In this document: positions 40-37,620 of the stretch, piece after piece
Position numbering within the stretch: the stretch's first letter is position 1
Layout: every line of letters starts with the position of its first letter
NCBI GenBank assembly: GCA_002269645.1
Contig: NIVC01000118.1
Coordinates: 248,001 to 312,000, forward strand
Direction: 5' to 3'
Length of the DNA stretch: 64,000 nucleotides
From: Macrostomum lignano
Lineage: Eukaryota
The notes under the pieces: generated by a model
What the model saw: the letters and a program-made list of their open reading frames with translations, nothing else
The model's database searches: none
What the model was told of the DNA's origin: nothing
Position numbers and translations under genes: made by a program

Positions 40-3000
40 CTTTTTAGATATCCACTCCCTGCCGAACACATAGGCGTTGCCCATCATTGAGTCGAGCAGC
101 TTTTGCAGATTGTCCGTTTCAGGCAGCAGTCTGCGACAAAACAGAGAAAAAAATAATTAAAGAATTTGTCGGTAAACAAACTGCTTTGGAAACCCGGGTA
201 ACCAGCAGGGAGGGGGGCGGGCGTCTGAGAAATGGCGTGACGCCTAATTCTAGCAGTGCACTCTTGCGAGTAGAATTTACTCCCTCTGTCGCTCTTTCTC
301 TCTCTGTTACACATTCAAGTTCCGAACAATAGCACAAAGGTATTACCAGAACAGTCATTTACGGTGAAAAAACACGAAGAAAAATACGCCCATAAATTTT
401 ACTTGAAAACGCTAGTTTTTCTACTGACATAAGTAGAAAACATGGCGTATTATTAGACAAAGAGTAAATTTTGTACAAAAAATCAAGTATACAGTAGAGT
501 TACAATTTAATAGAACCTACGTATTCGAGGCTGTAATCACGGTGTTGTTAAGGACGCGACTCGTCATAGTAACCAGCTCAATACTCTCCCTTTGCACCTG
601 AAATGGTTTAAGTGAAAAACAACAATATACAAAAAGGAATGATGACTACACACAACACAATAATTTTATTACCAACCTGAATAGCCAGGAAAATGGTGAG
701 AAACACGGACGCGCTCAGAACCAGCAGAATAACAAAAATGCTGACAATTGCGTCTAGTGAACTGGTTAAAATGTCCGACATCTGTTAAAATAAAAAAAAT
801 AGACAGTCAAGTAATTGTCGATGGCCGGTTACCTGTGGAGCATAAGTTAATCCATCGACTCCGGACCGCCCCAGCCTAACACCTGGTAGCCTCACCCGCT
901 ATTTATTTAGCTCCATACAGACCCGTCAACTGATGCAACCTTGTGAAATTCAACGATAAAAAGATATAAAAATACGCTACTAATCTACTGATAGTAAAAA
1001 CATGGGACTTTCAGCAATTATTAAAATATTTTTTATGATGGACCCTAACGAGCATAAAAACGTTACCCATATCTGTTAGACACAAATAATACCTGCTAGA
1101 CAGGAATAATACGTGTTAGACAAGAAATATACCAGTTAGACAGGAAGTATACCTGTTAGACAGGAAGTATACCTGTTAGACAGGAAGTTTACCTGTTAGA
1201 CAGGAAGTATACCTGTTAGACAGGAAGTATACCTGTTAGACAGGAAGTATACCTGCTAGACAGGAAGTATACCTGTTAGACAGGAAGTATACCTGCTAGA
1301 CAGGAAGTATACCTGCTAGACAGGAAGTATACCTGTTAGACAGGAAGTATACCTGTTGGACAGGAAGTATACCTGTTAGACAGGAAGTATACCTGTTAGA
1401 CAGGAAGTATACCTGCTAGACAGGAAGTATACCTGTTAGACAGGAAGTATACCTGTTAGACAGGAAGTTTACCTGTTAGACAGGAAGTATACCTGTTAGA
1501 CAGGAAGTATACCTGTTAGACAGGAAGTATACCTGCTAGACAGGAAGTATACCTGTTAGACAGGAAGTATACCTGCTAGACAGGAAGTATACCTGCTAGA
1601 CAGGAAGTATACCTGTTAGACAGGAAGTATACCTGTTGGACAGGAAGTATACCTGTTAGACAGGAAGTATACCTGTTAGACAGGAAGTATACCTGCTAGA
1701 CAGGAAGTATACCTGTTAGACAGGAAGTATACCTGCTAGACAGGAAGTATACCTGCTAGACAGGAATAATACTCTACATGCAAATCTTTACTTTAAGTAG
1801 TAAAACTAGCAAAAATGTAGTTTTATCAATCCAAACGCTACCTTTCGATCGCCCCGCAGCAGCAGCTTGTAGATGCCCCTGACGGGGAACGGGGCCAGGG
1901 CTTCTCGACGGCTTTCAACCAGTTGCATCGCCTGGCTGTAGGCTGAGCTGGCCCAGCGCTTTGCCAGCTGGCTGCCTCCGATGCTGTCACCTAAGGGGAG
2001 GGGCGGACCAGTGAACTGTCTTTGAGCTGTGAAAGTCTATCCTTGTAGAGGGTAGCAGTCTATCCTTGTAGAGGGTAGCAGTCTATCTATGGAGTAGAAG
2101 TCTATCACTCTATGGGGAAGAAGTCTATCACTCTATGGGGCAGAAGTCTGTCACTCTATGGGGCAGAAGTCTGTCACTCTATGGGGCAGAAGTCTGTCAC
2201 TCTATGGGGCAGAAGTCTGTCACTCTATGGGGCAGAAGTCTGTCACTCTATGGAGTAGAAGTCTGTCACTCTATGGAGTAGAAGTCTGTCACTCTATGGG
2301 GCAGAAGTCTCAGGCAGAAATCAAAAAACATTTTCAACTTATAAGTCGCACCTAAAGTCCGCAGAGCCACAAAAGCGGCCACAAAGGGCAGCAGAGACAG
2401 GGTCCAGGGCCTTGTCCACGCGTACACCAGCGCGTGGCCCCACAGCAGCAGCACAAAGAAAGTCTTGCTGCTCCGCGACTGCTGCTGCTGGCGCCGCTGT
2501 TTCTGTCGAATCAGTCGGTCGGCATTGACGCCGCAGCTCATGGATCGGGAGACTCGGCGCCTCGCCTGCGGCAGCGGCGGCGGCGGCTGCTGCTGCTGGC
2601 GAACTGCAGGCGTCGAAGTGCCACCCGAAGGTGACGCCGCGTCCACATTGTCGTCGTTGCCGCTCGAAACAATCGGCTGAAGATTCTCGTCGGCTATTGC
2701 CGTCTCCTCGGTGGAAAGCTGCTGCTGCTGCTGTTCTTGAGGAGTTTCGTCCGGTAGGTCGACGGGGTCATCGTCGGACTCCGACTCGCCCGTTGCCGCC
2801 GATGCCGCCACTGCTGCAGCGGTTGACGGCGAGTTGTTCGACCCGACCAGGCTCAGCAGGGAGGCGAAATCGTCTGCAGAGTTGAAGGTCAAGTGACGTG
2901 CAGTTCTCAGCGATGGAGGCTGTGAGCTGACACCTGAGCAAGCTGGCACACGCTCGCACAGAGTGTACAGCGGCGATGACTGTCTCATTTCTGGCCCTCG

Positions 3001-6000
3001 TAAGGCCGGAGCGGCACGACATGTACCTCCTCTGAAACTGCCTCTGTAAATGGCGCCCCCCTCTGTAGTTGGCGCCCCCTCTGTAGCTGGCGCCCTCTGA
3101 ATCCGGCGCCCCCTCTGTAGCTGGCGCCCTCTCTGTAGTTGGCGCCCCCCTCTGTATTTGGCGCCCCCTCTGTAACTGGCGCCCCCTGTAGTGGGCACCC
3201 CCTTTGTAGTTGGCGCCTCCTCTGTATCCGGCGACCCCTCTGTAGTTGGCGCCTCCTCTGTAGCTGGCGCCCCCCTCTATAGTTGGCGCCCCCTCTGTAG
3301 TTGGCGCCCCCCCTGAATCCGGCGCCCCCCTCTGTAGTTGGTGCCCCCTCTGTATTTGGCGCCCCCTCTGTAGTTGGCCCCCTCTGTAGTTGGCACCCCC
3401 TCTGTAGTTGGCGCCCCCTCTGTAGTTGGCGCCCCTTCTGTAGCTGGCGCCCCCTCTGTAGTTGGCGCCCCCCCTCTGTAGCTGGCGCCCCCCTCTGTAG
3501 CTGACGCCCCTGAATCCGGCGCTCCTCTCTGTAGCTGGCGCCCCCCCTCTGTATTTGGCGCCCCCTCTGTAGTTGGCGCCTCCTCTGTAGCTGGCGCCCC
3601 CCTCTGTAGCTGGCGCCCCCCCCTCTGTAGTTGGCGCCCCTCTGTAGCTGGCCCCCCTCTGTAGTTGGCGCCCCCTCTGTAGCTGGCGCCCCCTCTGTAG
3701 CTGGCGCCCCCCTCTGTAGTTGGCGCCCCTCTGTAGTTGGCGCCCCTCTGTAGCTGGCGCCCCTCTGTAGCTGGCGCCCCCTCTGTAGCTGGCGCCCCCT
3801 GAATCTGGCGCCCCCCTCTGTAGTTGGCGCCCCCTCTGTAACTGGCGCACCCTGAATCTGGCGCCCCCCTCTGTAGTTGGCGCCCCCTCTGTAGCTGGCG
3901 CCCCCCTGTATCCGGCGACCCCCTGTATTTAGGGCTCCATTCTGACAATTCAAATTCATAAGATAAATAAGAAAGGATATGATGAATTTATAAGCTAAGC
4001 TCACAGTTCTGACCAGACAGCAGGGAATCTCTGATCTCCACTATGCAGCCGAGGCAGACCAGAGAGATAAAGGAAATAAACAGTGGCACACTGAATATTC
4101 CAGTGATGGAGGACACATAGAACACAACTCCAATCCAGACAGGTAGTGCCAGCAGCTTCAGCAGAAAGCTGGACTCTGGGGTCCAGTAGAATAACACCAG
4201 GGACAAATAGAGAAGGATTCCAAATAGGATCTAAAAATATTTAGAGTATTATGTCCTTTTTATAGAATTAAGAACAAAACTATTTTATAGTCTAATTCAT
4301 ATATTTGGTCAAAAATGCATATTTAAAATGGTTAAAATTAGAATTTAAAAAGGTTATACTGCAAAAAAATATAAAAGAACAATATAACTTTAATAGCTAA
4401 ATGATGGCACAAAAAGTTTTTTAATGAATCTTTCTATGGTAAGAGATCAGGAATGACTATAGTGGTTTAATGTGGCACTGTATTGCATAAGTAATCAAGG
4501 CTTAATTTAAAGGGGTCATATTATTTTTTGGCTAAATTGAAATCATGGTTGAGTCTACTTAAGGAAGTTTATAGAATTAGTTATGACTATAGTTCAAATT
4601 AAAGTGCACCAATAATATAATATGTCTTAAACTAACTCATGGTATCTAAAAAATCTAGATTGTTTTTTTATATGCTTCAATTTCAAGATGCCTTATGAAT
4701 CTCTAGGAATAAGCCTATTCCTTTAAGAGCATAAAGCATATAGAAAGTTGAAGAAAATGGTTTTTTTATTATTAAAACATTCAGTATACTGTGCTTAATA
4801 GCAGTGATGGGCACTGCTAAATTTATTTTTAGCATTGCTAATTAGCACTGTTGCTAACTAATAGAAGAAAAAATTAGTGATCGCTAATAGCGGGCACTAT
4901 TTCTACTTTGAATTTAGCGCAATTAGTGCTGCTAATTTTGAAATGCACTAATTAATAAATACATTTAATGTAAACTGCCATTTTACACATATTTATACAT
5001 TTTTGCACATTTTTAACTCACACGTTTTAAATGAATAAGCTAATAATGCTATTGCTAATAATTTGTTTTTATTATCAATTCTAATAAAAAATCCTCAAGC
5101 CACTGAACTATCAGAGCAACAGTTGATAGAAAGAGTTCCTAAATTACAATGCTATTTGCCTTGAAAATGTCAAGGGCCCTTGCCACTGGGGCCATGGCCT
5201 TCTTATACTCAAGAAGGAAAGCAAGATCATCAGCTTGAAATGGTAGTATAGGATTTATTAACCCCACTATCACCCTATCAATATAGCTTGTCACTATATT
5301 TAGTAGTAGTTTCACTAGTCCAAATACTATTTGAATAGTTTTAAAGAAAACAAAATATTCAAATTCAAATTTATTTAACTAAATGCCATCAATCTATTCT
5401 ACAACTACTAACTAAAACATGCCATTTGTTATATAAACTTAAAGTAGATAATTAATTCATTATTATTAGGACTATATCCATATTATACTTATATAATGTA
5501 TCAATATTTATTAAATAAAAAATCTATACTAAACTTGCATTAATAATTATTTTATGAGCACAAAACACTTTCTGATTGATTTAAATTTATGTGCATAAAA
5601 AGCTACATTTGACAATATTAGAAAAACATTAAAAAAGCTTAAATATAGTATTAGTAGATTTATATAAAATATTACCAAATAACTCACCCATGTAGTAGAG
5701 AAGATGCTTATGAATGCTGATAACTTAGTCCAAATTGTTATTAAAAGTTCTAAATGTGTTTGAATGGGCACTAAACTAAGAAATAGATATACACATGGAA
5801 CAACAATTATAGCAACTAGGATCTTTTTCTTGTATGCAAGAATCTTTGTATAAAAGAGGTCCAAAAGTGAATTAATAGCTGAGAATGGCAGGATAGCAGC
5901 TTCAACAAATAAAGGCTTGCTTGATTCTTGCGTCGTTTTTAACCAAATCTTTAGAAGCGATGTCAACTTTTGCTTTATTGGGTGCAGGCATGATCCAACC

Positions 6001-6197
6001 AACAGTGCCCAAAGTAGAGGCTCAATAAAAGCTTCTAAAATGAAATATACTGCAATGCATGCAAGCAAAAATATGCCCACAAATGCTAAGGCTATAGTGT
6101 TGTAAAATGCCTGTTTAAGAGCTTTGTCATCGCTGGAAGGTAGAAACCTATAGAAGTAGTTCAATGGTGAAAAGTTTTCACCAGGCTTGCTAGTCAT
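40..6197 (-). CDS. TMEM245: Transmembrane protein 245 (5' part; gene continues left of window)
   Basis: Exons read with GT-AG ends: 6197-5688 (MTSK..DKALKQAFYNTIALAFV..YFILEAFIEPLLWALLVGSCLHPIKQKL), 4230-~4005 (ILFG..ALPVWIGVVFY), ~3000-2352 (RSSKTFFVLLLWG..SLLPF; 5' boundary not resolved), 1990-1842 (RREALAPFPVRGIYKLLLRGDRK), 781-677 (LDAIVSIFVILLV..AIQ), 597-521 (VQRESIELVTMTSRVLNNT), 130-40 (LLPE..NAYVFGREWISKK). Motifs match TMEM245 as I recall it, in the right order. Confidence 0.9.
792..870 (-). ncRNA. Y RNA / sbRNA-like gene, copy 1 (intronic in TMEM245)
   Basis: Minus strand GGCGGTC-C-GGAGTCGATGG-ATTAAC..GG-CCATCGAC-AATTACTTGACTGTC-TA-T8. Lower stem GGCGGUC/GACUGUC, upper stem GUCGAUGG/CCAUCGAC, T8 terminator 792-799, TATA (ATAAATAG) at 899-906. 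Confidence 0.8.
1080..1770. repeat. 20-bp minisatellite (ACCTGTTAGACAGGAAGTAT)n, about 33 units
   Basis: Direct reading; each unit contains the hairpin CCTGT-TAG-ACAGG. Confidence 0.95.
2035..2310. repeat. 23-bp minisatellite (GGGCAGAAGTCTGTCACTCTATG)n
   Basis: Direct reading; TMEM245 intron. Confidence 0.9.
3050..3930. repeat. ~18-20-bp GC-rich minisatellite (CTCTGTAGTTGGCGCCCC)n
   Basis: Direct reading; source of the repetitive ORFs at 2768-4004. Confidence 0.95.
4802..5290 (+). mobile_element. 5' half of a non-autonomous hAT-like element (paralog of 40256-41237)
   Basis: Starts CAGTGATGGGCACT and aligns by eye with 40256-40745; no right TIR seen. Confidence 0.75.
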
Positions 6198-7082
6198 ACT
6201 AATTATAAAAAACTGTTACCCTTAAAAATAGATTTGCTAATTAAAAATTATTAACACGCAATAATCAATAAAAAATCTTGGATTTCTTTGACTCAGTATT
6301 AGCTAGCTTAGCTTCACTCACAGTCACTGGTCACAAAATATGTCTAGAAGACCGAAAAGTTTCAAAAGTTTCGTGGAAAGAGCTAAGTTTAAAATGGTGC
6401 TAAAGCAGCCTTTAGCTTAAACATAATACATTTTGCTGATCGCAAGATACACTCAGCTTACAAGCTATATAAGATGCTTGTGTGTGCCAATTCATTTTTT
6501 AAATATAAACGTTAGTTTAACACCTCAAATTTTAGGATATTTAAGCGCACTGCATGTGCCGGTTGATTTGACCAATAGCTAATTGGACTTGTGCAGTAAA
6601 CGGAATTAAGAGTATAAAAATGAAACATTCCCTACACAATTCTATACAATATGCGACAAAATGCAGAGTATCATGCTGTGCATGTTAAATTAAAAAATGG
6701 TAATCTTTGCAATTCAGACAGCAGTGCCACTGCATGCTGAATAATTGCAATCATTGAAATATGAGAAAATGATTTTTCTATCTCAGGGTGTTATTTCTAT
6801 GCATATTAGGGGAATTATTGGCCCCTACAATATTGCATGATCTTTTATTTTTACGTCACTACAGTAATGGTCCTACAGCTTGACGTGTATATCACTGTAC
6901 TTTTCGGGCTTCTCAGATTGCAGAAACTGATCGATTAGTGCTCTGGCCTGGCCTCACCGCGTGACCTGCATGTCAACAGCTCAAATTAAGTTATTTGTTT
7001 TATTTTGATTATCCTTAATAAATATGTAGCAAAATTAAATTAGAAGACAGCGAGGGACAAGCACGAATGATTTGAAAAGGTA

Positions 7083-8395
7083 AAGGGGGCCTGAACCAAA
7101 AGTTTCCGGAATTTTTTCTAATACTTTTAGTTAATTTTTGTCCATGGAAAAGCTTAAAAGCAGCAACCATCTACTATGCTGTTGACCAGCCGAATCATCA
7201 CTTCTTAAGCTTAGCATTGCTCAGTTTCCCAGGGTCTGATTAAGCTAGCAAACGCATTCAATGGAACTGCCAAAAACCGAATGAATGGCGATCAATTCTG
7301 CTCAGCCATGCACTTTCGTGCGGGACGCAATTAAGCAGCCGAGGCACATCGCAAGTTGTTGCAGCTGATGGGCCCACATGCACCCTCCAAGTCATCGCTG
7401 TACGAGTGGTTCTCTCGCTTTGCTCAGGAGAACTATGAGCTGCAGGATAAGCCGAGGTCAGGCCGATCCCCTGCGCTGCTGATGCCGCGTTCTCCAAGCA
7501 CTTGAGGACACTCCGGACTACAGCGTGCGCAAGCTGTCAGCTGCTACTGGGGCCGTGTCCTATGCCACGGTCCAGCTAGCCTGCATGCTGCGGACAAGGT
7601 GCCGAAGAAGCCAACTCTGGAGCCCCATGAGCTGACGCCTCAGCAGCTGAGAGCCAGGGGTGGATGTGGCAACTTCGAATCTTTGTCAGGCCAGTTCGAC
7701 AAACTTTCTCAAGTCGATGATCGCTCAAGACGGAGCAGTGGGTCTGCTATAAGAACCCAAGCATGCACATCAGCCGTCTGGGTCGATGCTTCTGCAGAAC
7801 CACCCAGCTGCCCAATGCGGAACCCCCACTGCGGCAAGGAGCTGCTCTCTCTCTGCACGTTCTGCTCGTCTGGCCCTGTTTTCTGGGAGGTCATCCCGCA
7901 TGGCATGGCGGTAAACGCGGAGGTGATCTGCAGCGAACTGGAGGAGGTCGCGCCCGTTTGCTGCGATCCGTGTGCCCGGGGCACCGCGACAAGGTGCTCG
8001 GCCTCCTTGACAATTCGCGGCCTCACAAAAGCAAGCAAGGACTCACCCAAGCCAAGTTGGCAAGCCTGGGCTTCAGTGTTTTTCCCCACCCACCATACTT
8101 GCCGGACCTCTCGCCATGCGACTACCATGTGTTCAGGTCCCTCCAGAGCTTTGTGATGGACAGCCGTTCGCCAACAAGCAACATGTGGAGTAGGCAGTGC
8201 AGAAATGGATAGATTCAAGGCCTGCGAACTTCTGGAGGGAGGAGATCGAGGCATTGCCAGCAAGATGGAAGAGGGTCAGAGCCTTTTGATCATGGCAACT
8301 ACAGTACATCACATCGCTGTAAACTGTTTGTTCTTGAGAATATTTGTTACAGTTTTCAATTGTTCAAATTCCGGAAACTTTTGGCTCACCCTAAA
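7083..8395 (+). mobile_element. Decayed Tc1/mariner (mariner-type) transposon
   Basis: ~30-bp imperfect TIRs (..TGAACCAAAAGTTTCCGGAATTT at 7083-7113; inverse at 8366-8395) flanked by TA; frameshifted transposase with LYEWFSRF..DKPRSGR, PHELTPQQ and DNSRPH..HPPYLPDLSPCDYHVFRSLQ; about 1.3 kb. Confidence 0.9.
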
Positions 8396-8440
8396 TAGTT
8401 AATCCAAGAAGATTGATTAGTCTATATATTGCATTCTTAG

Positions 8441-8533
8441 AAAAAAGTCGGTTGTCAAGTGTATGCATGGGGGTAAACCATGGAAGTCTAAAATTGCTTT
8501 GAACGGAGTTTAACCTATCGACTCCGGACCGCC
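8441..8533 (-). ncRNA. Y RNA / sbRNA-like gene, copy 2 (c-type; 3' strand degenerate)
   Basis: GGCGGTCCGGAGTCGATAGGTTAAAC..CCCCATGCATACACTTGACAACCGAC-T6; TATA TTAAATAG at 8560-8567; both stems carry mismatches. Confidence 0.62.
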
Positions 8534-8940
8534 TTAGGTGAATTTTGGCGACTGAAATGCTATTTAAGCTTAAACAAGCTTTGATACAATAAAAAGAATT
8601 TTACTATTAAACTGCACATGTCATGCTCCTATCATCTACTTTAAGTAGAAATACACATTTTTCATTGCAAATTATGCAGCAAACTTCAGAAAACTATAAA
8701 AACTATAAGTTAGCGAATGATTAATTCGATCTTGCATCTGATTTTCTAAAGGTCAACAATATTTTTTATCATTAATAGAAGAGTAATTACACTTGAATTA
8801 ATCACATGACATATTTTTGTACTTTTATCCAATATAAAGGAAAGACCAATTTTACTTTCACTAAAGAGAAAAATTTAGTTACTGTTGGCACATTATGTAG
8901 AAAGTGACAGAAATAATTAAAATTATTGAAAATTCTGCAT

Positions 8941-9021
8941 AAAAAATTCGGCTGTCAAGTGAGTGTCGATGGGGTATAATTCGTTTGAGTAAGTTTGTTA
9001 ACCCATCGACTCCGGACCGCC
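8941..9021 (-). ncRNA. Y RNA / sbRNA-like gene, copy 3 (a-type)
   Basis: GGCGGTCCGGAGTCGATGGGTTAAC..CCCCATCGACACTCACTTGACAGCCGAA-T6; perfect 9-bp upper stem; TATA at 9045-9052. Confidence 0.82.
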
Positions 9022-9044
9022 TAGTTGAAATTGCGACTGAACAA

Positions 9045-9139
9045 CTATTTAACCTCTTCAATGCGCATCTCAATGCAATCCGGCAAATTTCTCTCGTAAA
9101 TAATTCACACATACGCTATTAATCTACTCTCAGTAGAAA
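9045..9139 (-). promoter_or_regulatory. Representative external (type-3-like) Pol III promoter of the Y-like genes: TATA plus palindromic CTACT-N3-AGTAG element
   Basis: TTAAATAG 24-29 nt upstream of all nine starts (one variant in copy 1, one mutated in copy 8). TCTACT-N3-AGTARAA-like motif at 984, 8635, 9123, 11009, 11503, 13193, 16037 and 16478, i.e. 102-140 nt upstream of eight of nine copies. Confidence 0.7.
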
Positions 9140-9403
9140 TGATAAACTATGCCAAGCTAAAAAAATTAACTAAGGAAAGTTAAATTTACAATAGAAAAAT
9201 TTCTTTGAAAGCCTGCTGACTTTTATATTTGATAAAAATTGTTAATATAAACGAATCTATCTAAATTTCCAATTCTTGGATCATCTAATTTTTTTGTCTG
9301 ACTTTTAACAAATAATTCTTGCAGCGGGCACTTTTTAAAATACTTCTTTTTTAAAGGCCAGAAATTAAACAAAAAATTTTGAAAACTGTTTAATTTAACC
9401 GGC

Positions 9404-9477
9404 AAAAAGCTGGTCAAGTGAGTGCCAATGGGGTATTTTGAGACCAATTCAGTTAACCCATCGACTCCGGACCAGCC
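9404..9477 (-). ncRNA. Y RNA / sbRNA-like gene, copy 4 (b-type)
   Basis: GGCTGGTCCGGAGTCGATGGGTTAACTGAATTGGTCTCAAAATACCCCATTGGCACTCACTTGACCAGC-T5. Begins GGCUGGUCCG like human Y1 and ends CACUUGAC; perfect GCUGGUC/GACCAGC stem; TATA at 9501-9508. Confidence 0.85.
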
Positions 9478-9568
9478 CAACAGTTGGGGTGTCCGACTGC
9501 CTATTTAAGCCTGAACAATGCTGCAAGCTAAGCCTAATTCTCTGCGCTGTATGCTTTTGTGGTGAAGA

Positions 9569-10750
9569 CGGTCTCTGACTGTTTTTACCCTGGCTGCCTC
9601 TCTGGCGGCATTTCTCGGGTTGTGCGCAATCCAATCTCGGGTTGTGCGCTCTCGCTAGCCCAATTTTCTAAGGGTCCGCCCCGGGGGCTGTGCCTATTCT
9701 AAAATTACCCTATTGATTTCATTCCAATCAATTTGGCCCTCGGCCTTGGGTTAGGGGGTGTACCTGGAGTGAGTTGGAGATCTGGACTGCAGTGTGGCTA
9801 GAACGGGACTTGAGCCCCCCGGTCGCACCCGCCCTGCAGGAAAGACGACCATTCACAAAGGTGTACGGTAGAGCCCAGTCGATGCCAGCCCTGAGGCTGG
9901 CCCCGGGTTAGGGTTCAGGTGCTCCTCCCATTCTGCCATTTCTTTGTGTTTTTATCTGGGCTGGCATCCCAGTGTTTTTGTTCCTTTGTGTTTTACCCGG
10001 CCATTAGTTTGCCATTCCAATTCTTGGAGTTATGAGCTCTGCCCTACCTGCCCGGTCCATCTTTCTTGCCTGCCTTGGTCCATCTGCTGGCTCCTCTGGT
10101 TGTCTCCCTGCCTATTGTGTCTCGGCTCTCATCTCTGACAGTGGATTGGAGTCCTGGGTTGGATGTTCGTCCCGAATCGGGGAAAACCGGCTGAGTCCGG
10201 TTTCCTCTTGCCCCTTGTGCCCCTCAGCTCCGCCCCCTTGGCCTGGCCTCCAATATACATGTAGAGCTGGATAGGTGATACCCTTGTGGCTTGCAGCCCT
10301 GTAGGTAGTCGCTATATCCTGCCTGATAGGAGACTCGCCCTCGGAAACAAGCCTTCCAGACTCACTCCAATATTAAGCCATTTCCGAGACTTCGGGGTTT
10401 CCCCGCTCTCGGACCGCTTCTCAGTAGTAACCCAAGCATTTTTCATTCCAATTCTTTTTTGGCGCACTCCTGGGATTTGTCTGCTGGGTGGTGGCCTGGG
10501 TGGACTCGGTCCTTGCACGGTCCCATATGATTCCACAAATATTGGGTTGGCGGTGTCTTAGTCCATAAGGCTTGGGTTAGTAGCTCCAATGCTCCATGCT
10601 CTCCCCAGAGTCCTGAGCTCTGGTTCCAATAGTGGCCTCTCGGGCTTAAAGCCCCTGGTAGTATAACCCACAGCAAGATCCATGCGGCAGATCGAGCCCC
10701 CCTAGGGCTGATCCGCGGGCAGCGCTTCTCCTCCGTTTTAACAACAACAA
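9569..10750. mobile_element. Unclassified interspersed repeat insertion ending in (AAC)3; 3' part homologous to 16600-17010
   Basis: Interrupts the upstream region of Y copy 4 at 9568; 10290-10750 aligns by eye with 16600-17010; no protein domain recognised. Confidence 0.55.
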
Positions 10751-10826
10751 AGAGAAAAATTTAGTTACTGTAGGCATATTATGTAGAAAGTGACAGAAAT
10801 AATTAAAATTAATGAAAATTCTGCAT

Positions 10827-10907
10827 AAAAAATTCGGCTGTCAAGTGAGTGTCGATGGGGTATAATTCGTTTGAGTAAGTTTGTTAACCCATCGACTCCG
10901 GACCGCC
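10827..10907 (-). ncRNA. Y RNA / sbRNA-like gene, copy 5 (a-type, same as copy 3)
   Basis: Same sequence as 8941-9021; TATA at 10931-10938. Confidence 0.82.
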
Positions 10908-11290
10908 TAGTTGAAATTGCGACTGAACAACTATTTAACCTCTTCAATGCGCATCTCAATGCAATCCGGCAAATTTCTCTCGTAAATAATTCACACATAC
11001 GCTATTAATCTACTCTCAGTAGAAATGATAAACTATGCCAAGCTAAAAAAATTAACTAATGAAAGTTAAATTTACAATAGAAAAATTTCTTTGAAAGCCT
11101 GCTGACTTTTATCTTTGATAAAAATTGTTAATATAAACGAATCTATCTAAATTTCCAATTCTTGGATCATCTAATTTTTTTGTCTGACTTTTAACAAATA
11201 ATTCTTGCAGCGGGCACTTTTTAAAATACTTCCTTTTCTAAAGGCCAGAAATTAAACAAAAAAAATTGAAAACTGTTTAATTTAACCGGC

Positions 11291-11364
11291 AAAAAGCTGG
11301 TCAAGTGAGTGCCAATGGGGTATTTTGAGACCAATTCAGTTAACCCATCGACTCCGGACCAGCC
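11291..11364 (-). ncRNA. Y RNA / sbRNA-like gene, copy 6 (b-type, same as copy 4)
   Basis: Same sequence as 9404-9477; TATA at 11388-11395; distal element at 11503. Confidence 0.85.
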
Positions 11365-11875
11365 CAACAGTTGGGGTGTCCGACTGCCTATTTAAGCCTG
11401 AACAATGCTGCATCGAAGTCTAAGCCTAATTCTCTGTGCTGTATGCTTCTGTGGTGAAATTCATAGTGCAAACTCAATGAAATTAGAGTAGCACGCATTT
11501 CGTCTACTATAAGTAAAAAAATAAAAATGTCACTTGAATTTTTTGCGTTGGTGCAATAAAATTCTTTATCTGATTCGCTCGTGATTCGCATTTGCAATTG
11601 TTCACTTACTGGTAAGTTTGGCACTTGTTATAAATTGTTTGCTTTCTGTTTTCTGACTAACCAGCATACCGTAACCGCAGGTTTTACTGCTCGTACTACG
11701 CTCGTATTAATAAGCTGCGTATTAATAAGGGGCCACTGCAAGCGGTACCAATAAGTATTTAAACATTTACTTACAATTTTATGCTTCCGGCACTAATAAT
11801 TAATTATACGAATCGTAAATATTATTACTGATACATGTACGATTAAATGAAATAAAGTACGATTAATAGTTCATT

Positions 11876-12052
11876 AATACCCATGCTTTAAGGGCGTTAA
11901 TGGGAAAATCAGAGGGTGCCTCTGAACCGCCGCCGCCGCCGCCGCCGCCGCCACCTCCGCTGACAAGCGATCAGAACGAATTTGACAACGCTAGACAGCC
12001 TGCAAACGGCGCCCTCTGATTTTCCTATTAACGCCCTTAAAGCAAGGGTATT
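11876..12052. mobile_element. Small MITE-like inverted repeat (45-bp arms, (GCC)n in the spacer)
   Basis: 11876-11920 is the reverse complement of 12008-12052 with 3 mismatches. Confidence 0.6.
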
Positions 12053-12605
12053 ACTATTATTGCGCCATAGACATTTGTGTCCTTGACAAAGTGGGACAGA
12101 ATAATCGGGCGTTAAATGTCATTAACTGCCCACTAATTTGCATTATAGTAAGTTTGACATAGACAATCGGGCGTTAAATGTCATTGTACCATGACCTTTG
12201 TGCCCGCTGGGCACTTATTCTTGCCTTTTAATGCCATAGACTACATTTAAGCCCGCTTGCAGGAGTCAAACTTACTTTAATGCAAATTAGCGGGCAGTTA
12301 ATGTACTATTAACTGCCCACTAATTTCGATATTTCTTTCCTGCAAGCGGGAGTAGCAGACGAGACCGAGACGCTGCCGGGGATGCAATCTTGCTTACCCG
12401 CTGCCAGCAGTTTTTGTACCTCGGCGGCCTCGTGCCGGACGTCGCCGACTATCTGGTGAGACGACGCGGGGACTGGCCTGGGCCGCGTTTCGTTCTGTGC
12501 GCTCCGTGCTCCATTCTGAAGCCCTGGATGATGGGCTCAGGGCACGGCTGTTTCAGGCAGTCGTTGAGACTGTCTTGTTGTACAACGCCAAGACCAACCC
12601 TAATA

Positions 12606-12917
12606 CGTACAGTATTAGAATTTGTAGTAAATTTGCACTTTTTTCTACTCAGTGGCGATAACTGCATGTTTTATACGAGTTAGTAGTATGGGTTTTAGCA
12701 TAGTGCACTAGCTCTACAGACAGGCTTTGATGTAATAAAAATAATCTTACCACTAAAATGCACACGTCATGCTCCTATCATCTACTTCAAGTAGAAATAA
12801 ACATTTTTCATTCCATAGTGCACTATGCTAAAACCCGTACTAACTCGTATAAAACATGCAGTTATCGCCACTGAGTAGAAAAAAGTGCAAATTTACTACA
12901 AATTCTAATACTGTACG
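12606..12917. repeat. Foldback: ~103-bp near-perfect inverted arms enclosing a copy of the Y copy-7 upstream region
   Basis: 12606-12710 versus 12816-12917; spacer 12711-12815 matches 13123-13228. Confidence 0.85.
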
Positions 12918-12978
12918 CACATCTACATGTACGTAGAAGACAGTGACCAGGATTTAAAATTAATGAAGATTCTGCATT

Positions 12979-13088
12979 AAAAATTTGGCAGTCAAGTTAG
13001 TGCCGATGGCCGTATTTCATGCCTATCTAATATCTATCTATCTATCTATCATGAGTAAGTTTTGTTAAGCCATCGACTCCGGACCGCC
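12979..13088 (-). ncRNA. Y RNA / sbRNA-like gene, copy 7 (loop expanded by a GATA microsatellite)
   Basis: GGCGGTCCGGAGTCGATGGCTTAAC..(GATA)n..GGCCATCGGCACTAACTTGACTGCCAAA-T5; compensatory C-G at the top of the upper stem; TATA at 13115-13122. Confidence 0.78.
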
Positions 13089-13312
13089 TTGCTTGAGCTT
13101 TGGCGTCTGAACTGCTATTTAAGCTCTACAGACAGGCTTTGATGCAATGAAAAGAATCTTACCACTAAAATGCACACATCATGCTCCTATCATCTACTTC
13201 AAGTAGAAATACACATTTTTCATTCCAGATTTCGCAGAAAAACTACATTTAGAAACTATACTTGGCGTCTGAATAATTCTGATCAGATGCAATCTGAAAT
13301 TTATAAAAGTGA

Positions 13313-15629
<2,317 letters not shown>

Positions 15630-15843
15630 TCAAAAGGCCAACATCATATTTTATTTCTCATAAACTGCTTCATAATTATTACAGTAAATAATTCTACTGT
15701 AACAATTCCACTATAAAGCATAAACTAATTTTACTTTCACTAAAATGAAACAATGCAAATTTAAGTTACTAAAAATCTTTATTAATGTTAGACAAATTAT
15801 GTAAACAGTGATAGCAATTTTAAACTTAATGAAAATTCTGAAT

Positions 15844-15934
15844 AAAAATTTCGGCTGTCAATTTCAAGTGTCGATGGGATGGAATTCATGGCTGTGTAAG
15901 CTCGTTATAGTTTACCCTTCGTCTCCGGACCGCC
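15844..15934 (-). pseudogene. Y RNA / sbRNA-like gene, copy 8 (a-type, probably decayed)
   Basis: GGCGGTCCGGAGACGAAGGGTAAAC..CCCATCGACACTTGAAATTGACAGCCGAAA-T5: two mismatches in the upper stem, an insertion in the CUUGAC strand, TATA mutated (plus strand CTGTTTAA). Confidence 0.6.
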
Positions 15935-16263
15935 TGGTTGAAATGGCAACTGCAACTGCTGTTTAAACTCCTCAATGCGCAGCTCATGCAATCCGGCCAA
16001 TTTCTCCAATAAATAATTCTACACATACGCTATTAATTTACTTACAGTAGAAAATGGCAAACTATGCGTAGAACATTTTGAAAGAATGTAACATTGAAAA
16101 AATTAACTAAAAATTGTTTGAAAATCTGCTGGTCAGTGTTGGACTTTTGATCTTGTCAAGGATCAAGTAGTCCTTGTCATTCACCTATTCATGTACATTT
16201 ACATGTTGAATTCTCGTTTCCTAAAGCCCAGAAATATTTGAAAACTTTTGGATTAAAGCCAGC

Positions 16264-16338
16264 AAAAAAGCTGGTCAAGTGAGTGCCAATGGGGTATTTT
16301 GAGAGCAATTCAGTTAACCCATCGACTCCGGACCAGCC
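16264..16338 (-). ncRNA. Y RNA / sbRNA-like gene, copy 9 (b-type)
   Basis: One loop substitution relative to copy 4; T6 terminator; TATA at 16362-16369; distal element at 16478. Confidence 0.85.
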
Positions 16339-16589
16339 CGGCAGTTGGGGTGTCCGACTGCCTATTTAAGCCTGAACAATGCTGCAAGCTAAGCCTAGCT
16401 AATTCGCTGCGCTGTACGCTTTTGTGGCGAAATTCATCGTGCGGATTCTATATAAAATTGGAGTAGCGCACATTTCGTCTACTTTAAGTAGGAAAATAGA
16501 AATGTCGATTGGATTTTTTTCGTTTGTGCAATAAAATTGAGAAGTCACAGCTTACGGGGGGCATTTCGACTGCACTTTAACTCTCTGGA

Positions 16590-23100: not shown

Positions 23101-24558
23101 TCTCAGATGCAGCAGCAGCAGTCAGAGCTAGCGGCTCTGCCATCAGCATCTATTGATTGGAATTTGAAATACGGATTAGAAGGCGGCAGCGCTCCGGTCA
23201 CGCCTCGACACTTGTCTCCTTCGTCTCCTTCGACAGCTCCTGTAGCTTTGATTGCATCCGCTGTCGATTCTCCTTCGGCTCTGCTAGCTCCGGCCTCGTC
23301 TCCGCCTCTGGCGCCTTCGCCGCGGCCTGAACAACAGCAGCAGCAGCAGCAACAGTCGCAGCCTTCGCTGCCGCAGACGCCGACATCGTCGTCTAGCGAT
23401 CTTCGCCGCTACCACGCCGGAGTTATCGACGCTATTGATAGCATCCGTCGGTTGAAGCGCAAGGTACTACTAGATCGAGTAGTGCAAGCAGTGTGCAAGA
23501 AGCTCCGAGTCGGTGCTGGACTAGCGGAAGCGGTCATCGAGGATATGGTTAGAATTGGCCGCTTAAAAAAGGTCCGCTGTTCAACTGACAACTCGCTGAC
23601 TCTGTACTTGCCTAATCAGAAGCCGCGCTCAGTTGCTGTGTCCACTGTGTCAGCCAAAGCTAAACCGAAGTCCCAGCAGCAGCAGCAGCTGCAAGCAAAG
23701 AAAACAACTCATATTCGCAACAATTATCATGAGTTATTTGTTAAACAGCCGGCCCACAGTCCGGGTGTGTTTGAAATCTGGCTAGTTGGGCCCAGCAATG
23801 GCACTGGACAGCCTGGCTGCTGCTTCACAGTCCGTCTGATGCAGGAGCTGTGCCGGGCGCTGCAGCAGGCGCTGGACAATCCAGCTTGCAGGCTGGTCCG
23901 TCTGGCTAACACAGATCCCCGCTGCTTTAGTAGGGGAGTCGATCTCAGCTCAATGCTAGCAGCCAAGCCCGGTCAGGAGGCTTCTCTAGCTGTCAATCAG
24001 CTCACTGACGAATTGCAACGCTTAGTGTCGGCTATGGTTGAATTTCCCAAGTTATTGGTTGCCACGGTTACAGGAGCTTGCGTAGGCTTAGGCGCGGCCC
24101 TGCTGCCGCTGTGCGATTTTGTCTACGCTAGCGATAGCGCCTATTTTTATTTGCCCTACGCCAAGCTCAAGCAGCCGTGCGAGGCTGGCGTGTCCTACAC
24201 TCTGCGACAGGCGTTGGGCAAGCCGACCGCCTCTGAGATGCTGCTTGCCGGACGGAAGCTCACAGCTAACGAGGCGTGCACTCGGGGCCTGGTGTCTAGC
24301 GTGATCTTTGCTGACACATTTCAACAGGAAGCCGCCGTCCGTTGCGCCAGCATCGGCGCCAGCGTCGGTGCCGAGAATGTGCGCCAGACTAAAGCGCTGA
24401 TGCATTCGACTAGCAGGTCGTCTGTTATCCAGGCCTGCCAGGCCGAGTGCCTGGCCTTGCGCTCCTATTGGCTGAGAGATGACGCCAGGCAGCTGATGCG
24501 CGAATTTCTTGGCGAAGATCGCGACTTGCTAGAGCGCGCGGAGGCGTCGGTCTTGTGA
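20120..24558 (+). CDS. CDYL: Chromodomain Y-like protein (chromodomain + winged helix + crotonase fold)
   Basis: Predicted exon 1 20120-20137 (MGRSYR|gtaagt) joins in phase 0 to exon 2 22411-24558 (ttgcacag|ISKIIDKRKKQGRVEYRIRWTGFKSSQDTWEP = chromodomain). C-terminal enoyl-CoA hydratase fold (FSRGVDL, EFPKLLVATVTGACVGLGAALLPLCDFVYASD, ASEMLLAGRKLTANEA..GLVS). Confidence 0.88.
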
Positions 24559-34021: not shown

Positions 34022-34055
<34 letters not shown>

Positions 34056-34820: not shown

Positions 34821-34947
34821 AGGGCGAGTCGGAGGTTCAGCAATTTGAGCAAATAAGACACTCACTGGAGCACACGCCTGCGAATAACTATAAGTGAGCT
34901 CTGCAAATAGCAGCAATGCAACCGAAGCTCGCTTGCAGCTAGGGCTC

Positions 34948-35753: not shown

Positions 35754-37620
<1,867 letters not shown>

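What the first reader, a model, noticed from the sequence alone, without database searches (positions are those of the whole stretch)
792..16338. Cluster of nine Y RNA / stem-bulge RNA-like Pol III genes in a probable flatworm genome
Seen: nine co-oriented minus-strand loci (792-870, 8441-8533, 8941-9021, 9404-9477, 10827-10907, 11291-11364, 12979-13088, 15844-15934, 16264-16338). They share 5' GGC(T)GGTC-C-GGAGTCGATGG(G)-TTAAC and 3' CCCATCGAC..CTTGAC..-T5-8, a variable loop, a TATA box and no internal A/B boxes. Established: vertebrate Y RNAs begin GGCUGGUCCG and end CACUUGAC..UUU, forming the bulged-C helix bound by Ro60; nematode sbRNAs add an upper stem with a UG/CA pair and a UUAUC-like motif at the loop start, and both families occur in clusters. 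Inference: this is a multigene Y/sbRNA locus with three subtypes, implying Ro60 RNPs (RNA quality control, possibly replication-related roles) in a lineage where I know of no described Y RNA.
Basis: partly seen in the sequence, partly recalled or inferred. Interest (0 to 1): 0.92.

Follow-up and report, generated by a model that had tools for sequence, protein, structure and literature searches.

The report
Flatworm Y / stem-bulge RNA gene cluster
A 16-kb stretch of the genome of the free-living flatworm Macrostomum lignano holds nine tandemly duplicated copies (seven apparently intact) of a small RNA gene that matches vertebrate Y RNAs and nematode stem-bulge RNAs, which extends this family to a phylum where I could find no published description of it.

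Summary
Exactly nine minus-strand copies of the motif GGTCCGGAGTCGATGG lie at the stated coordinates, against 0.13 expected by chance. A covariance model built from them finds nothing else in the window.

The window is Macrostomum lignano, contig NIVC01000118.1, so the "probable flatworm" guess is right.

Six of the nine copies pass Rfam's gathering score for the nematode stem-bulge RNA (sbRNA) family RF01656. A seventh scores just below it. The three copies that start GGCUGG also match Y_RNA, but below its threshold.

Seven copies fold into the canonical shape: a lower stem with a bulged C, a 9-bp upper stem with a central UG-CA motif, and a variable loop that starts UUAAC. Each has a TTAAATAG box about 30 nt upstream, a run of at least five T at the end, and no internal A or B box. 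Two copies (15844 and 8441) are decayed. A promoter-only remnant lies at about 12710-12815.

RNA-coding parts are far more conserved than their flanks. M. lignano also encodes a full-length Ro60 ortholog.

No paper in the searchable library describes a flatworm Y RNA or sbRNA. Verdict: a real new member of a known RNA family, found by a standard Rfam scan. Expression, Ro60 binding and any replication role are untested.

The parts
16264..16338 (-). A-type Y/sbRNA gene (GGCUGGUCCGGAGUCGAUGGGUUAAC...CCCAUUGGCACUCACUUGACCAGC-U6), intact
   Evidence: RF01656 45.4 bits, Y_RNA 26.9 bits. R1 84.8 bits. Fold -25.8 kcal/mol, z -3.4.
16362..16369 (-). TTAAATAG box at -31..-24 of A_16264
16478..16492 (-). 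Upstream palindrome (1 mismatch to TCTACTnnnAGTAGA) at about -153 of A_16264
15844..15934 (-). Decayed B-like copy, probable pseudogene
   Evidence: Two A.A mismatches in the upper stem. No Rfam hit at E<=1. Fold z -0.4. TATA box mutated to TTAAACAG. Gene body 84% identical to B, flank 76-79%.
15959..15966 (-). Mutated TATA-like box TTAAACAG at -32..-25 of the 15844 copy
16037..16051 (-). Upstream palindrome (1 mismatch) of the 15844 copy
12979..13088 (-). C-type gene, intact, with a long loop that holds a (GAUA)5 microsatellite
   Evidence: RF01656 38.5 bits. R1 74.3 bits. Fold -32.3 kcal/mol, z -4.5. Compensatory G-C to C-G change at the top of the upper stem.
13115..13122 (-). TTAAATAG box at -34..-27 of C_12979
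13193..13207 (-). Upstream palindrome TCTACTTCAAGTAGA (exact) of C_12979
12710..12815 (-). Promoter-only remnant. It is a 95%-identical copy of the C-type upstream region, palindrome at 12781-12795 included. It is cut just before the TATA box and has no RNA gene.
   Evidence: It is enclosed by a roughly 100-nt inverted repeat, 12606-12710 against 12816-12917, 96% identical.
11291..11364 (-). A-type gene, intact
   Evidence: RF01656 44.5 bits, Y_RNA 27 bits. R1 83.7 bits.
11388..11395 (-). TTAAATAG box at -31..-24 of A_11291
11503..11517 (-). Upstream palindrome (1 mismatch) of A_11291
10827..10907 (-). B-type gene, intact; upper stem and adjoining core identical to the RF01656 consensus
   Evidence: RF01656 42.6 bits. 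R1 95.9 bits.
10931..10938 (-). TTAAATAG box at -31..-24 of B_10827
11009..11023 (-). Upstream palindrome TCTACTCTCAGTAGA (exact) of B_10827
9404..9477 (-). A-type gene, intact; it lacks the upstream palindrome
   Evidence: RF01656 44.5 bits, Y_RNA 27 bits. Fold z -2.7. Sequence upstream of about -100 is unrelated to that of the other A copies.
9501..9508 (-). TTAAATAG box at -31..-24 of A_9404
8941..9021 (-). B-type gene, intact; gene body and 200-nt upstream flank 100% identical to B_10827
   Evidence: RF01656 42.6 bits. Fold z -2.9..
9045..9052 (-). TTAAATAG box at -31..-24 of B_8941
9123..9137 (-). Upstream palindrome (exact) of B_8941
8441..8533 (-). Decayed C-like copy, probable pseudogene
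   Evidence: A 2-nt deletion and a G-to-A change break the upper stem, and the lower stem has two mismatches. No Rfam hit. Fold z -0.2. Gene body 67% identical to C against 79% for the flank.
8560..8567 (-). TTAAATAG box at -34..-27 of the 8441 copy
8635..8649 (-). Upstream palindrome (exact) of the 8441 copy
792..870 (-). D-type gene, intact but the most divergent; it lies 7.5 kb from the main cluster
   Evidence: RF01656 30.4 bits, below the gathering score. R1 69.3 bits. Fold z -1.9. 8-bp upper stem.
899..906 (-). ATAAATAG box at -36..-29 of D_792
984..998 (-). Upstream palindrome (1 mismatch) of D_792

Best explanation
This is a tandemly duplicated cluster of RNA polymerase III genes for the M. 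lignano homologues of vertebrate Y RNAs and nematode stem-bulge RNAs.

How each gene is transcribed (inferred from sequence):
- Each gene has its own external promoter with no internal box A or B. It comprises a TTAAATAG TATA-like box about 30 nt upstream, a TTGCA(T/G) element about 20-25 nt further up, and in most copies a TCTACTnnnAGTAGA palindrome at about -105 to -155.
- Transcription would start at the GGC and end in the T5-8 run.

The predicted RNA (about 70-105 nt) is a single hairpin with four modules:
- A 7-8 bp lower stem, (G)GC(U)GGUC paired with GAC(C)AGC(U), followed by a single bulged C and a 2-bp G.U/G-C step facing an asymmetric CACUU bulge. In Y RNAs this region is the Ro60-binding module.
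- A 9-bp upper stem, GUCGAUGGG paired with CCCAUCGAC, with G-C clamps at both ends and a central UG-CA. [quoted passage not shown]
- A variable loop that starts UUAAC.
- A 3' oligo-U tail, which in other Pol III transcripts is the La-binding site.

Seven copies (A x3, B x2, C, D) look functional. Two are decaying pseudogenes and one is a promoter-only remnant. The cluster grew by repeated duplication of an A-B-C unit.

Because M. lignano also has a Ro60 ortholog, the most likely working model is that these RNAs act like Y RNAs and sbRNAs elsewhere. That would mean Ro60 and La RNPs for RNA surveillance, and/or an upper-stem-dependent role in DNA replication.

Shown here: the sequences, structure, promoter and terminator signals, conservation pattern, family match, and presence of Ro60. 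Inferred only: transcription, protein binding and cellular function.
For: Copy number: 9 motif copies against 0.13 expected, all on the minus strand, and no further copies with a dedicated covariance model.

Family match: six copies score at or above the RF01656 gathering score and one scores 30.4 bits. The A copies score 27 bits on Y_RNA, covering the full model length.

Structure: 92% of pair cells are standard pairs, against 14-51% when the partners are slid by 1-3 columns. No shuffle out of 500 reaches the observed pairing or covariation score. Pairing-preserving changes include U-A to U.G, G-C to G.U and G-C to C-G. Seven copies fold with z between -1.9 and -4.5.

Promoter and terminator: the TATA-like box sits at a fixed distance, the palindrome occurs 15 times against 3 expected, a T run follows each gene, and there is no box A or B.

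Selection on the RNA: A-copy gene bodies are 99-100% identical while their 200-nt upstream flanks are 61-83% identical (binomial P = 1.7e-5). A and B bodies are 81% identical while their flanks are about 40% identical.

Architecture: the A-B(-C) unit is duplicated three times.

Organism: M. lignano.

Ro60: the M. lignano protein P0281 (PAA62904.1) has TROVE and vWA_Ro60 domains. It matches Xenopus Ro60 at E = 1.5e-123 and 44% identity over the full length, and its best PDB hits are human and Xenopus Ro60.

Family definition and functions: PMC4450293 and PMC4726728. Tandem arrays are typical of sbRNAs (PMC5745555).
Against: - There are no expression data of any kind, so transcription, RNA ends and Pol III dependence are inferred from sequence signals only.
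- The loop motif is UUAAC rather than the UUA(U/C)C that PMC4450293 gives as typical and shows matters for full-length sbRNA activity.
- The Y_RNA model score is below its gathering score.
- B-type lower stems carry a G.A mismatch.
- In C. elegans, sbRNAs were not recovered in Ro60 (ROP-1) immunoprecipitates (PMC4726728), so Ro60 binding cannot be assumed.
- RF01656 also scores 49-54 bits on Y-like elements inside a tRNA array on a virus-like marine contig (L042). Passing that model therefore proves architecture, not orthology to the C. elegans genes.
- Two of the three pairs with changes on both sides depend on where a 1-nt gap is placed, and the copies are paralogues from a single genome.
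Confidence: 0.85

Rival explanations
1. The units are copies of a Y/sbRNA-derived SINE or retropseudogene family, or the termini of a transposon. On this view they are repeats spread by mobility rather than genes.
For: Mammalian Y RNAs are known to spawn many retropseudogenes (my own knowledge; pseudogenes are also mentioned in PMC5745555). The region contains a mariner-type transposase remnant at 7599-8263 and a foldback-like inverted repeat around a promoter fragment. Two copies are decayed.
Against: - All nine copies are co-oriented and confined to 16 kb of a 64-kb window, with none elsewhere in it.
- Each keeps 100-150 nt of conserved upstream promoter with a TATA box at a fixed distance. 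Retroposed copies would lack this.
- The genes end in T runs, not A tails.
- The duplicated segments include intergenic DNA, for example 710 nt at 97.7% identity and the A-B units, as expected for segmental tandem duplication.
- Gene bodies are much more conserved than their flanks.
Confidence: 0.05
2. The loci are real Pol III genes for a lineage-specific hairpin RNA that resembles Y RNAs and sbRNAs only through convergence or chance. On this view it has an unrelated function, with no Ro60 binding and no replication role.
For: The Y_RNA score is sub-threshold (27 against 38). The loop motif differs (UUAAC). RF01656 also hits elements in a virus-like contig, which shows the model is not lineage-specific. 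No functional data exist.
Against: - The match is not just a shape. The core GGUCCGGAGUCGAUGGGUUA plus CCCAUCGACAC.ACUUGAC of the B type is letter-for-letter the RF01656 consensus across both stems.
- The A type shares GGCUGGUCCG, UGGGUUA, CCCA and ACUUGAC.AGC.UUUU with the Y_RNA consensus.
- Every defining architectural feature listed in PMC4450293 is present except one loop base.
- A Ro60 ortholog is present in the same genome.
Confidence: 0.07
3. The cluster is nematode (or other foreign) DNA, either contamination in the assembly or a recent horizontal transfer, rather than native flatworm genes.
For: The sequence is strikingly identical to the nematode sbRNA consensus.
Against: The cluster lies on a 363-kb contig, about 6 kb from a gene whose product is an annotated M. 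lignano protein (100% identity). The loop motif (UUAAC in all intact copies) and the promoter elements (TTAAATAG and the palindrome) are shared by all four diverged types. That implies long residence and diversification in this genome.
Confidence: 0.01

Closest known systems
Nematode stem-bulge RNAs (sbRNAs; Rfam RF01656 ceN72-3_ceN74-2; Deng 2006, Boria 2010, Kowalski 2015 = PMC4450293)
   Same: - Six copies pass the family's gathering score.
- The lower stem has a single bulged C.
- The 9-bp upper stem has G-C clamps and a central UG-CA, and in the B type it is identical in sequence to the model consensus.
- The loop is variable, with a conserved pentanucleotide at its 5' end.
- The promoter is upstream and the gene ends in a T run.
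- The genes lie in tandem arrays (PMC5745555).
   Different: - The phylum is Platyhelminthes (Spiralia), not Nematoda (Ecdysozoa).
- The loop motif is UUAAC rather than UUA(U/C)C.
- The RNAs are shorter (about 70-80 nt for A, B and D) than the 130-position model.
- The promoter elements upstream of the TATA box (TTGCAT-like element, TCTACTnnnAGTAGA palindrome) have not been compared with nematode PSEs.
- Expression and replication activity are untested.
Vertebrate Y RNAs (Rfam RF00019; Y1, Y3, Y4, Y5)
   Same: - The A type begins GGCUGGUCCG and ends ACUUGACCAGCUUUUU, as in the Y_RNA consensus.
- It has the bulged C, the UGGGUUA / CCCA upper-stem top and an oligo-U tail.
- Several paralogous types sit together in one cluster.
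- A Ro60 ortholog is present in the genome.
   Different: - The score is 27 bits against a gathering score of 38.
- The upper-stem sequence is of the sbRNA type (GUCGAUGGG), not guaGUGGG.
- The loops are unrelated.
- Ro60 and La binding are not shown.
Insect and amphioxus Y/sbRNA-like RNAs (Anopheles, Bombyx, Branchiostoma; cited in PMC4726728)
   Same: These are further non-vertebrate, non-nematode members of the same superfamily, so the family is already known to be wider than the two classical groups.
   Different: I had no sequences of these to compare. None of them is a spiralian.
CeY RNA, the Ro60 (ROP-1)-bound Y RNA of C. elegans
   Same: It has the Ro-binding lower stem with a bulged C.
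   Different: CeY lacks the conserved upper-stem motif and is inactive in replication assays (PMC4450293). All intact M. lignano copies keep the upper-stem motif, and no CeY-like divergent member is seen in this window.
Bacterial and phage Y RNAs (Yrl RNAs; PMC4201824, PMC12135203)
   Same: They share a Ro60-binding stem module. A virus-like marine contig found here (L042) carries three Y-like elements with the same GGUCCGGAG...UGGGUUAAC core, interleaved with tRNA genes.
   Different: The M. lignano genes are eukaryotic nuclear genes, each with its own TATA-box promoter and T-run terminator. They have no tRNA-like domain and no adjacent Ro60 gene. The Ro60 locus L050 has no copy within 10 kb.

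Membership tests
Stem-bulge RNA (Rfam RF01656 / sbRNA as defined in PMC4450293) | Covariance-model score at or above the curated gathering score (38 bits) | tested here: met
   Six of nine copies score 38.5-45.4 bits. D_792 scores 30.4 bits, below the threshold. The two decayed copies give no hit at E<=1.
Stem-bulge RNA (Rfam RF01656 / sbRNA as defined in PMC4450293) | [quoted passage not shown] | tested here: met
   Pairs 1-8 with 100-107 are 92% paired, and column 9 (C) is invariant and unpaired. The B type has one G.A mismatch.
Stem-bulge RNA (Rfam RF01656 / sbRNA as defined in PMC4450293) | Upper stem of 9 bp with G-C clamps at both ends and a central UG-CA motif | tested here: met
   GUCGAUGGG pairs with CCCAUCGAC in seven copies. 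Variation is wobble-compatible or compensatory. The stem is broken in copies 15844 and 8441.
Stem-bulge RNA (Rfam RF01656 / sbRNA as defined in PMC4450293) | [quoted passage not shown] | tested here: not met
   All seven intact copies read UUAAC, which differs from the motif at the fourth base. It is the same position and four of five bases match, so it is a variant rather than an absence.
Stem-bulge RNA (Rfam RF01656 / sbRNA as defined in PMC4450293) | An individual upstream Pol III promoter and an oligo-T terminator | tested here: inconclusive
   A TATA-like box lies at a fixed distance, conserved upstream elements are present, a T5-8 run follows each gene and there are no internal boxes. 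These are sequence signals only. No PSE model for flatworms was available and no transcription data exist.
Stem-bulge RNA (Rfam RF01656 / sbRNA as defined in PMC4450293) | Expressed as a discrete small RNA | not testable with these tools
   No RNA-seq or transcript collection for M. lignano could be searched by nucleotide sequence.
Stem-bulge RNA (Rfam RF01656 / sbRNA as defined in PMC4450293) | Supports initiation of chromosomal DNA replication through the upper stem | not testable with these tools
   This needs the cell-free assay of PMC4450293 or an in vivo knock-down.
Y RNA (Rfam RF00019; Ro60-associated) | Covariance-model score at or above the gathering score (38 bits) | tested here: not met
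   The three A copies score 26.9-27.0 bits, and the other copies give no hit at E<=1.
Y RNA (Rfam RF00019; Ro60-associated) | Conserved termini GGCUGGUCCG... and ...ACUUGAC-AGC-UUU forming the bulged-C helix | tested here: met
   The A type is aligned to the Y_RNA consensus over model positions 1-96. Types B to D lack the U at position 4.
Y RNA (Rfam RF00019; Ro60-associated) | A Ro60 (TROVE2) ortholog is present in the same organism | tested here: met
   P0281 (UniRef A0A1I8GVM1) and PAA62904.1 / PAA83827.1 of M. lignano have TROVE and vWA_Ro60 domains. P0281 is 44% identical to Xenopus Ro60 (E = 1.5e-123), and its best PDB hits are human and Xenopus Ro60.
Y RNA (Rfam RF00019; Ro60-associated) | Physical association with Ro60 (and La) | not testable with these tools
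   This requires immunoprecipitation or gel shift.

The most novel reading that the evidence does not exclude
These would be the first Y/sbRNA genes described in any flatworm, and in any spiralian.

Their stems are essentially identical to the nematode sbRNA consensus. That would mean the sbRNA-type architecture (Ro-binding lower stem plus replication-competent UG-CA upper stem) predates the split between Ecdysozoa and Spiralia. "Stem-bulge RNA" would then be the ancestral protostome Y RNA rather than a nematode speciality.

M. lignano has a Ro60 ortholog, four diverged paralogue types, and is an experimentally tractable regenerating animal (my own knowledge). The long-standing question of whether Ro-RNP and DNA-replication functions are split between paralogues could be tested in vivo in a stem-cell-rich animal.
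Probability: 0.6. Interest if true: 0.55.

Novelty: new member of a known kind. Interest (0 to 1): 0.48.

Why it matters
Y RNAs and sbRNAs are needed for initiation of DNA replication in vertebrates and in C. elegans. Together with Ro60 they also act in RNA quality control (PMC4726728, PMC4450293). Their reported distribution is patchy: vertebrates, amphioxus, nematodes and two insects. A dedicated survey of schistosome genomes found none (PMC2770079).

A clear multi-gene locus in a free-living flatworm fills the spiralian gap. It shows that both stem modules have been kept almost unchanged between nematodes and flatworms. It also supplies query sequences and a covariance model for searching planarians and parasitic flatworms.

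M. lignano is a laboratory model (my own knowledge), so the Ro60-binding and replication functions could be separated experimentally there.

The find is incremental, not a new kind of system, because a routine Rfam scan detects it. Rfam appears to scan this genome already, since PMC8824774 says vault RNAs had been identified in M. lignano, citing the Rfam website. These loci may therefore already be listed in Rfam or RNAcentral without any published description. I could not check this.

Tried and rejected
- **Organism from beta-galactosidase.** The beta-galactosidase exon gave only hits of 61% identity or less, from mixed phyla. The CDYL-like ORF settled the organism. An exact look-up of the 679-aa ORF failed because the annotated product has an extra upstream exon.
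- **Literature.** A search for the RNA sequence itself gave 0 papers. Macrostomum plus "Y RNA" gave 0. "Y RNA" plus Platyhelminth gave 9 papers, of which only the schistosome survey reporting absence was relevant among those I assessed. "Y-RNA" plus flatworm gave only three extracellular-vesicle or circulating small-RNA papers, judged from their titles and abstracts. TROVE2 plus planaria gave 0. One broad search was swamped by flatworm papers.
- **Metagenome scan** for GGTCCGGAGNNNNTGGGTTAHC. It returned 45 loci. About half are eukaryote-type Y/sbRNA-like genes, with a TATA box near -30, a ..TTGACC 3' arm and a T run. The rest are chance matches in GC-rich bacterial coding DNA. None is a close relative of the M. 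lignano copies, none has taxonomy, and most do not reach the RF01656 gathering score. This gave context but no flatworm relatives. Their upper stems differ in geometry, so I did not use them for covariation.
- **Viral-contig scan**. It gave one chance match in coding sequence.
- **Ro60 look-up.** The human query returned only vertebrates. The 50%-identity representative search had no names. Clustering the hits by identity did not separate phyla. The first batch of ten name look-ups missed and the second found the M. lignano protein. No sbRNA copy lies within 10 kb of that Ro60 gene.
- **Internal Pol III boxes.** Only 2-mismatch matches were found.
- **Other Rfam families** (vault, 7SK and others). 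None hit at E<=1.
- **ORFs inside the cluster.** ORFs at 13194-15716 and 7763-8212 have no Pfam match. The ORF at 7599-8156 matches only a partial mariner-type transposase domain.

Full report
**Observation.** The 16-mer GGTCCGGAGTCGATGG with up to 3 mismatches occurs nine times and only on that strand, against 0.13 expected from dinucleotide-preserving shuffles. I built a covariance model (R1) from the nine copies and ran it with filters off over all 64 kb. It returns those nine at 49-96 bits. The next hit is 13.5 bits, on the opposite strand of the B copies. So there are nine copies in the window and no hidden tenth gene.

**Organism.** The window is eukaryotic. It carries a CDYL-like gene with an enoyl-CoA hydratase (ECH) domain, GH35 beta-galactosidase exons and a CPAP-like ORF. 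The 679-aa ORF at 22519-24558 is 100% identical to [quoted passage not shown]. The public locus around that gene is GCA_002269645.1, contig NIVC01000118.1. It is base-for-base identical to window 10120-34558, so the window is about 248,001-312,000 of that 363-kb contig. M. lignano belongs to Platyhelminthes, Rhabditophora, Macrostomorpha. No protein gene is called over the part of the cluster covered by that locus.

**The RNA.** I group the copies as follows:
- A: 16264, 11291, 9404 (74-75 nt, starting GGCUGGUCC)
- B: 10827, 8941 (81 nt)
- C: 12979 (110 nt)
- D: 792 (79 nt)
- Bx: 15844 and Cx: 8441, both decayed

The seven intact copies fold into one hairpin. It has a 7-8 bp lower stem, an invariant bulged C, and a G.U/G-C step opposite a CACUU bulge. 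Above that is a 9-bp upper stem, GUCGAUGGG paired with CCCAUCGAC (8 bp in D, where the top pair is A.G), and a variable loop that starts UUAAC. The gene ends in a run of U.

On the alignment, 92% of pair cells are standard pairs, against 14-51% when the 3' partners are slid by 1-3 columns. None of 500 shuffles reaches the observed pairing or covariation score. The changes preserve pairing: U-A to U.G and G-C to G.U in the A type, and G-C to C-G at the top of the upper stem in C. Two further double changes in the lower stem depend on where a 1-nt gap is placed, so I count them as weak evidence. All the sequences are paralogues from one genome, which also limits what covariation can show.

Folding energies are lower than for shuffled sequence in the seven intact copies (z = -1.9 to -4.5). 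They are not lower for Bx (-0.4) or Cx (-0.2). In those two the upper stem is broken by two A.A mismatches and by a 2-nt deletion respectively.

**Signals around the genes.** Every copy has a TTAAATAG-type box at a nearly fixed distance from the GGC. It lies at -31..-24 in A and B, -34..-27 in C and Cx, and -36..-29 in D. In Bx it is mutated to TTAAACAG. About 20-25 nt further upstream lies ATTGCAT, or GCTTGCAG in the A type. Eight of nine copies have a palindrome, TCTACTnnnAGTAGA, at about -105 to -155. That pattern occurs 15 times in the window against 3 expected. Each gene runs into T5-8. Nothing resembling box A or box B matches with fewer than 2 mismatches.

This layout is that of an external, TATA-dependent Pol III promoter of the U6 / Y RNA type, as I know it from established work. 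The roles of the elements upstream of the TATA box are inferred only.

**Cluster history and selection.** Read along the minus strand, the order is A(16264)-Bx-C, then a promoter-only remnant, then A(11291)-B(10827), then A(9404)-B(8941)-Cx, and 7.5 kb further on, D. The B-A unit 8863-9566 repeats at 10749-11458 (97.7% over 710 nt) and, more diverged, at 15771-16538. The C and Cx flanks are 85% identical.

The remnant at 12710-12815 is a 95% copy of the C-type upstream region. It is cut just before the TATA box and enclosed by a roughly 100-nt inverted repeat.

RNA-coding parts are conserved far beyond their flanks:
- A copies are 99-100% identical in the gene but 61-83% in the 200 nt upstream. 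One difference or fewer in 74 nt at 17% divergence has P = 1.7e-5.
- A and B bodies are 81% identical while their flanks are about 40% identical, which is no better than noise.
- The Cx body (67%) has diverged faster than its flank (79%), and the Bx body (84%) about as fast as its flank (76-79%), as expected for pseudogenes.

Purifying selection, or gene conversion limited to the RNA, fits functional genes.

**Family.** With Rfam's own thresholds, six copies are assigned to RF01656 (ceN72-3_ceN74-2), a nematode stem-bulge RNA family, at 38.5-45.4 bits against a gathering score of 38. D scores 30.4 bits. Bx and Cx are not detected. In the B-type alignment the match line reproduces the model consensus letter for letter through the core GGUCCGGAGUCGAUGGGUUA and CCCAUCGACAC.ACUUGAC.

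The three A copies also align end to end with Y_RNA (RF00019). They share GGCUGGUCCG, UGGGUUA, CCCA and ACUUGAC.AGC.UUUU, but reach only 27 bits against a gathering score of 38.

Kowalski et al. (PMC4450293) define sbRNAs by four features: a lower stem with one bulged C, a 9-bp upper stem with G-C clamps and a central UG-CA, a UUA(U/C)C motif at the start of the loop, and individual Pol III promoters. Tandem arrays are the rule (PMC5745555). All of these are present here except that the loop motif is UUAAC.

I therefore file the loci as members of the Y/sbRNA superfamily, of the sbRNA type. They are not members of Rfam's Y_RNA family as that model defines it.

One caution applies. RF01656 is not lineage-specific. 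It gives 49-54 bits on Y-like elements embedded in a tRNA array on a virus-like marine contig (L042).

**Ro60.** I started from human RO60, whose sequence I checked against PDB entry 9nen. I then went through a Xenopus Ro60 returned by the homologue search, an exhaustive HMMER search of cluster representatives and name look-ups.

One representative, P0281, is "TROVE domain-containing protein, Macrostomum lignano". Its cluster includes the NCBI entries PAA62904.1 (BOX15_Mlig033807g1) and PAA83827.1 (BOX15_Mlig002278g1). It aligns with Xenopus Ro60 over residues 4-535 (E = 1.5e-123, 44% identity). It has TROVE and Ro60-specific vWA domains. Its best solved-structure matches are human RO60, Xenopus Ro60 and Deinococcus Rsr. 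So the protein partner exists in this animal. Ro60 was also seen in other spiralians (Lingula, Octopus, Pinctada). No sbRNA copy lies within 10 kb of the Ro60 gene.

**Mechanism.** The best-supported reading is that each intact gene is transcribed by Pol III from its TATA-box promoter into a 70-105 nt hairpin RNA ending in oligo-U. The parallels in other animals are as follows:
- The lower stem with the bulged C is the Ro60 site in Y RNAs.
- The oligo-U tail binds La (PMC4726728, PMC4450293).

Which of these roles the flatworm RNAs have is not shown. In C. elegans the sbRNAs were not found in Ro immunoprecipitates, and only the divergent CeY RNA was (PMC4726728). Ro60 binding should therefore not be assumed. 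All intact copies here keep both modules.

**Rivals.**
- A SINE or retropseudogene family is unlikely. The copies are clustered, co-oriented and promoter-bearing, end in T runs, and were duplicated together with intergenic DNA.
- Convergence is unlikely given the letter-for-letter identity with the family consensus over both stems.
- Contamination is excluded by linkage to M. lignano genes and by diversification into four types that share lineage-specific features.

**Novelty.** Copeland et al. 2009 searched the schistosome genomes and found no Y RNA. They noted that Y RNAs were then known only from vertebrates and nematodes (PMC2770079). The 2015 review adds Anopheles, Bombyx and amphioxus (PMC4726728). 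In the searchable library, no paper combines Macrostomum with "Y RNA". Papers since 2016 that mention sbRNAs treat them as a nematode family. Of the papers combining "Y RNA" with Platyhelminth, only Copeland et al. was relevant among those I assessed.

The library lacks most subscription journals, and I could not query Rfam or RNAcentral. PMC8824774 says vault RNAs had been identified in M. lignano, citing the Rfam website, so automatic entries for these loci may already exist.

I rate this a new member of a known kind. It is real, well supported and useful, but a routine Rfam scan finds it and it does not change what is known about how this RNA family works.

Noticed in passing
L042 (marine metagenome contig Ga0206126_10002995), 1336-2590, minus strand: An AT-rich, densely coding contig. 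Most of its ORFs have no Pfam or PHROG match; one has a KH domain and one a GIY-YIG domain. It carries eight tRNA genes interleaved with three Y/sbRNA-like elements. Two of these score 54.4 and 49.3 bits on RF01656, higher than the flatworm genes, and two have the same UUAAC loop motif. It looks viral (giant virus or large phage) rather than animal. Y-like RNAs inside a tRNA array may merit a separate look.
   Followed up: partly
window 12606-12917: A 106-nt fragment of the C-type promoter, palindrome included but without the TATA box or the gene, lies between two roughly 100-nt inverted-repeat arms that are 96% identical. This may be a foldback or MITE-like rearrangement that removed a tenth gene copy.
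   Followed up: partly
window 36028-36042: A one-mismatch copy of the promoter palindrome (ACTACTTGAAGTAGA) lies far from any Y/sbRNA gene, next to an AAATTAAATAG sequence. The palindrome may therefore be a more general M. lignano promoter element.
   Followed up: no
window 12979-13088 (loop, about 13025-13050): The loop of the C-type RNA contains a (GAUA)5 microsatellite flanked by CAUG...CAUG. This shows that the loop tolerates repeat expansion.
   Followed up: no
window 608-791: The T-run terminator of D_792 is followed after about 10 nt by ...ttttaacag and an ATG-initiated 57-aa hydrophobic ORF on the same strand. A 216-aa membrane-protein-like ORF lies at 5547-6197. The D copy may lie in an intron or just upstream of an exon of a same-strand gene.
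   Followed up: no
window 7599-8263: A remnant of a mariner/Tc1-type transposase (Pfam Transposase_1, partial DDE domain) lies at the edge of the main cluster.
   Followed up: partly
window 1069-1766, 2266-4004, 26933-27577, 29602-30749, 34894-35382, 46349-47300, 48926-49767, 51236-52972, 55083-56959, 59259-60100: Many long minisatellite or tandem-repeat arrays produce spurious long ORFs in several frames.
   Followed up: no
window 38467-38520: A sub-threshold match to mir-203 on both strands (29.8 and 27 bits against a gathering score of 65). It is probably just a palindromic hairpin.
   Followed up: no
window 22519-24558, 33444-34916, 43614-50193: Neighbouring protein genes: a CDYL-like gene with chromo and enoyl-CoA hydratase domains (BOX15_Mlig028982g1), a glutamine-rich ORF with a weak match to the CPAP tubulin-binding region, and a GH35 beta-galactosidase (GLB1-like) split into several exons.
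   Followed up: partly
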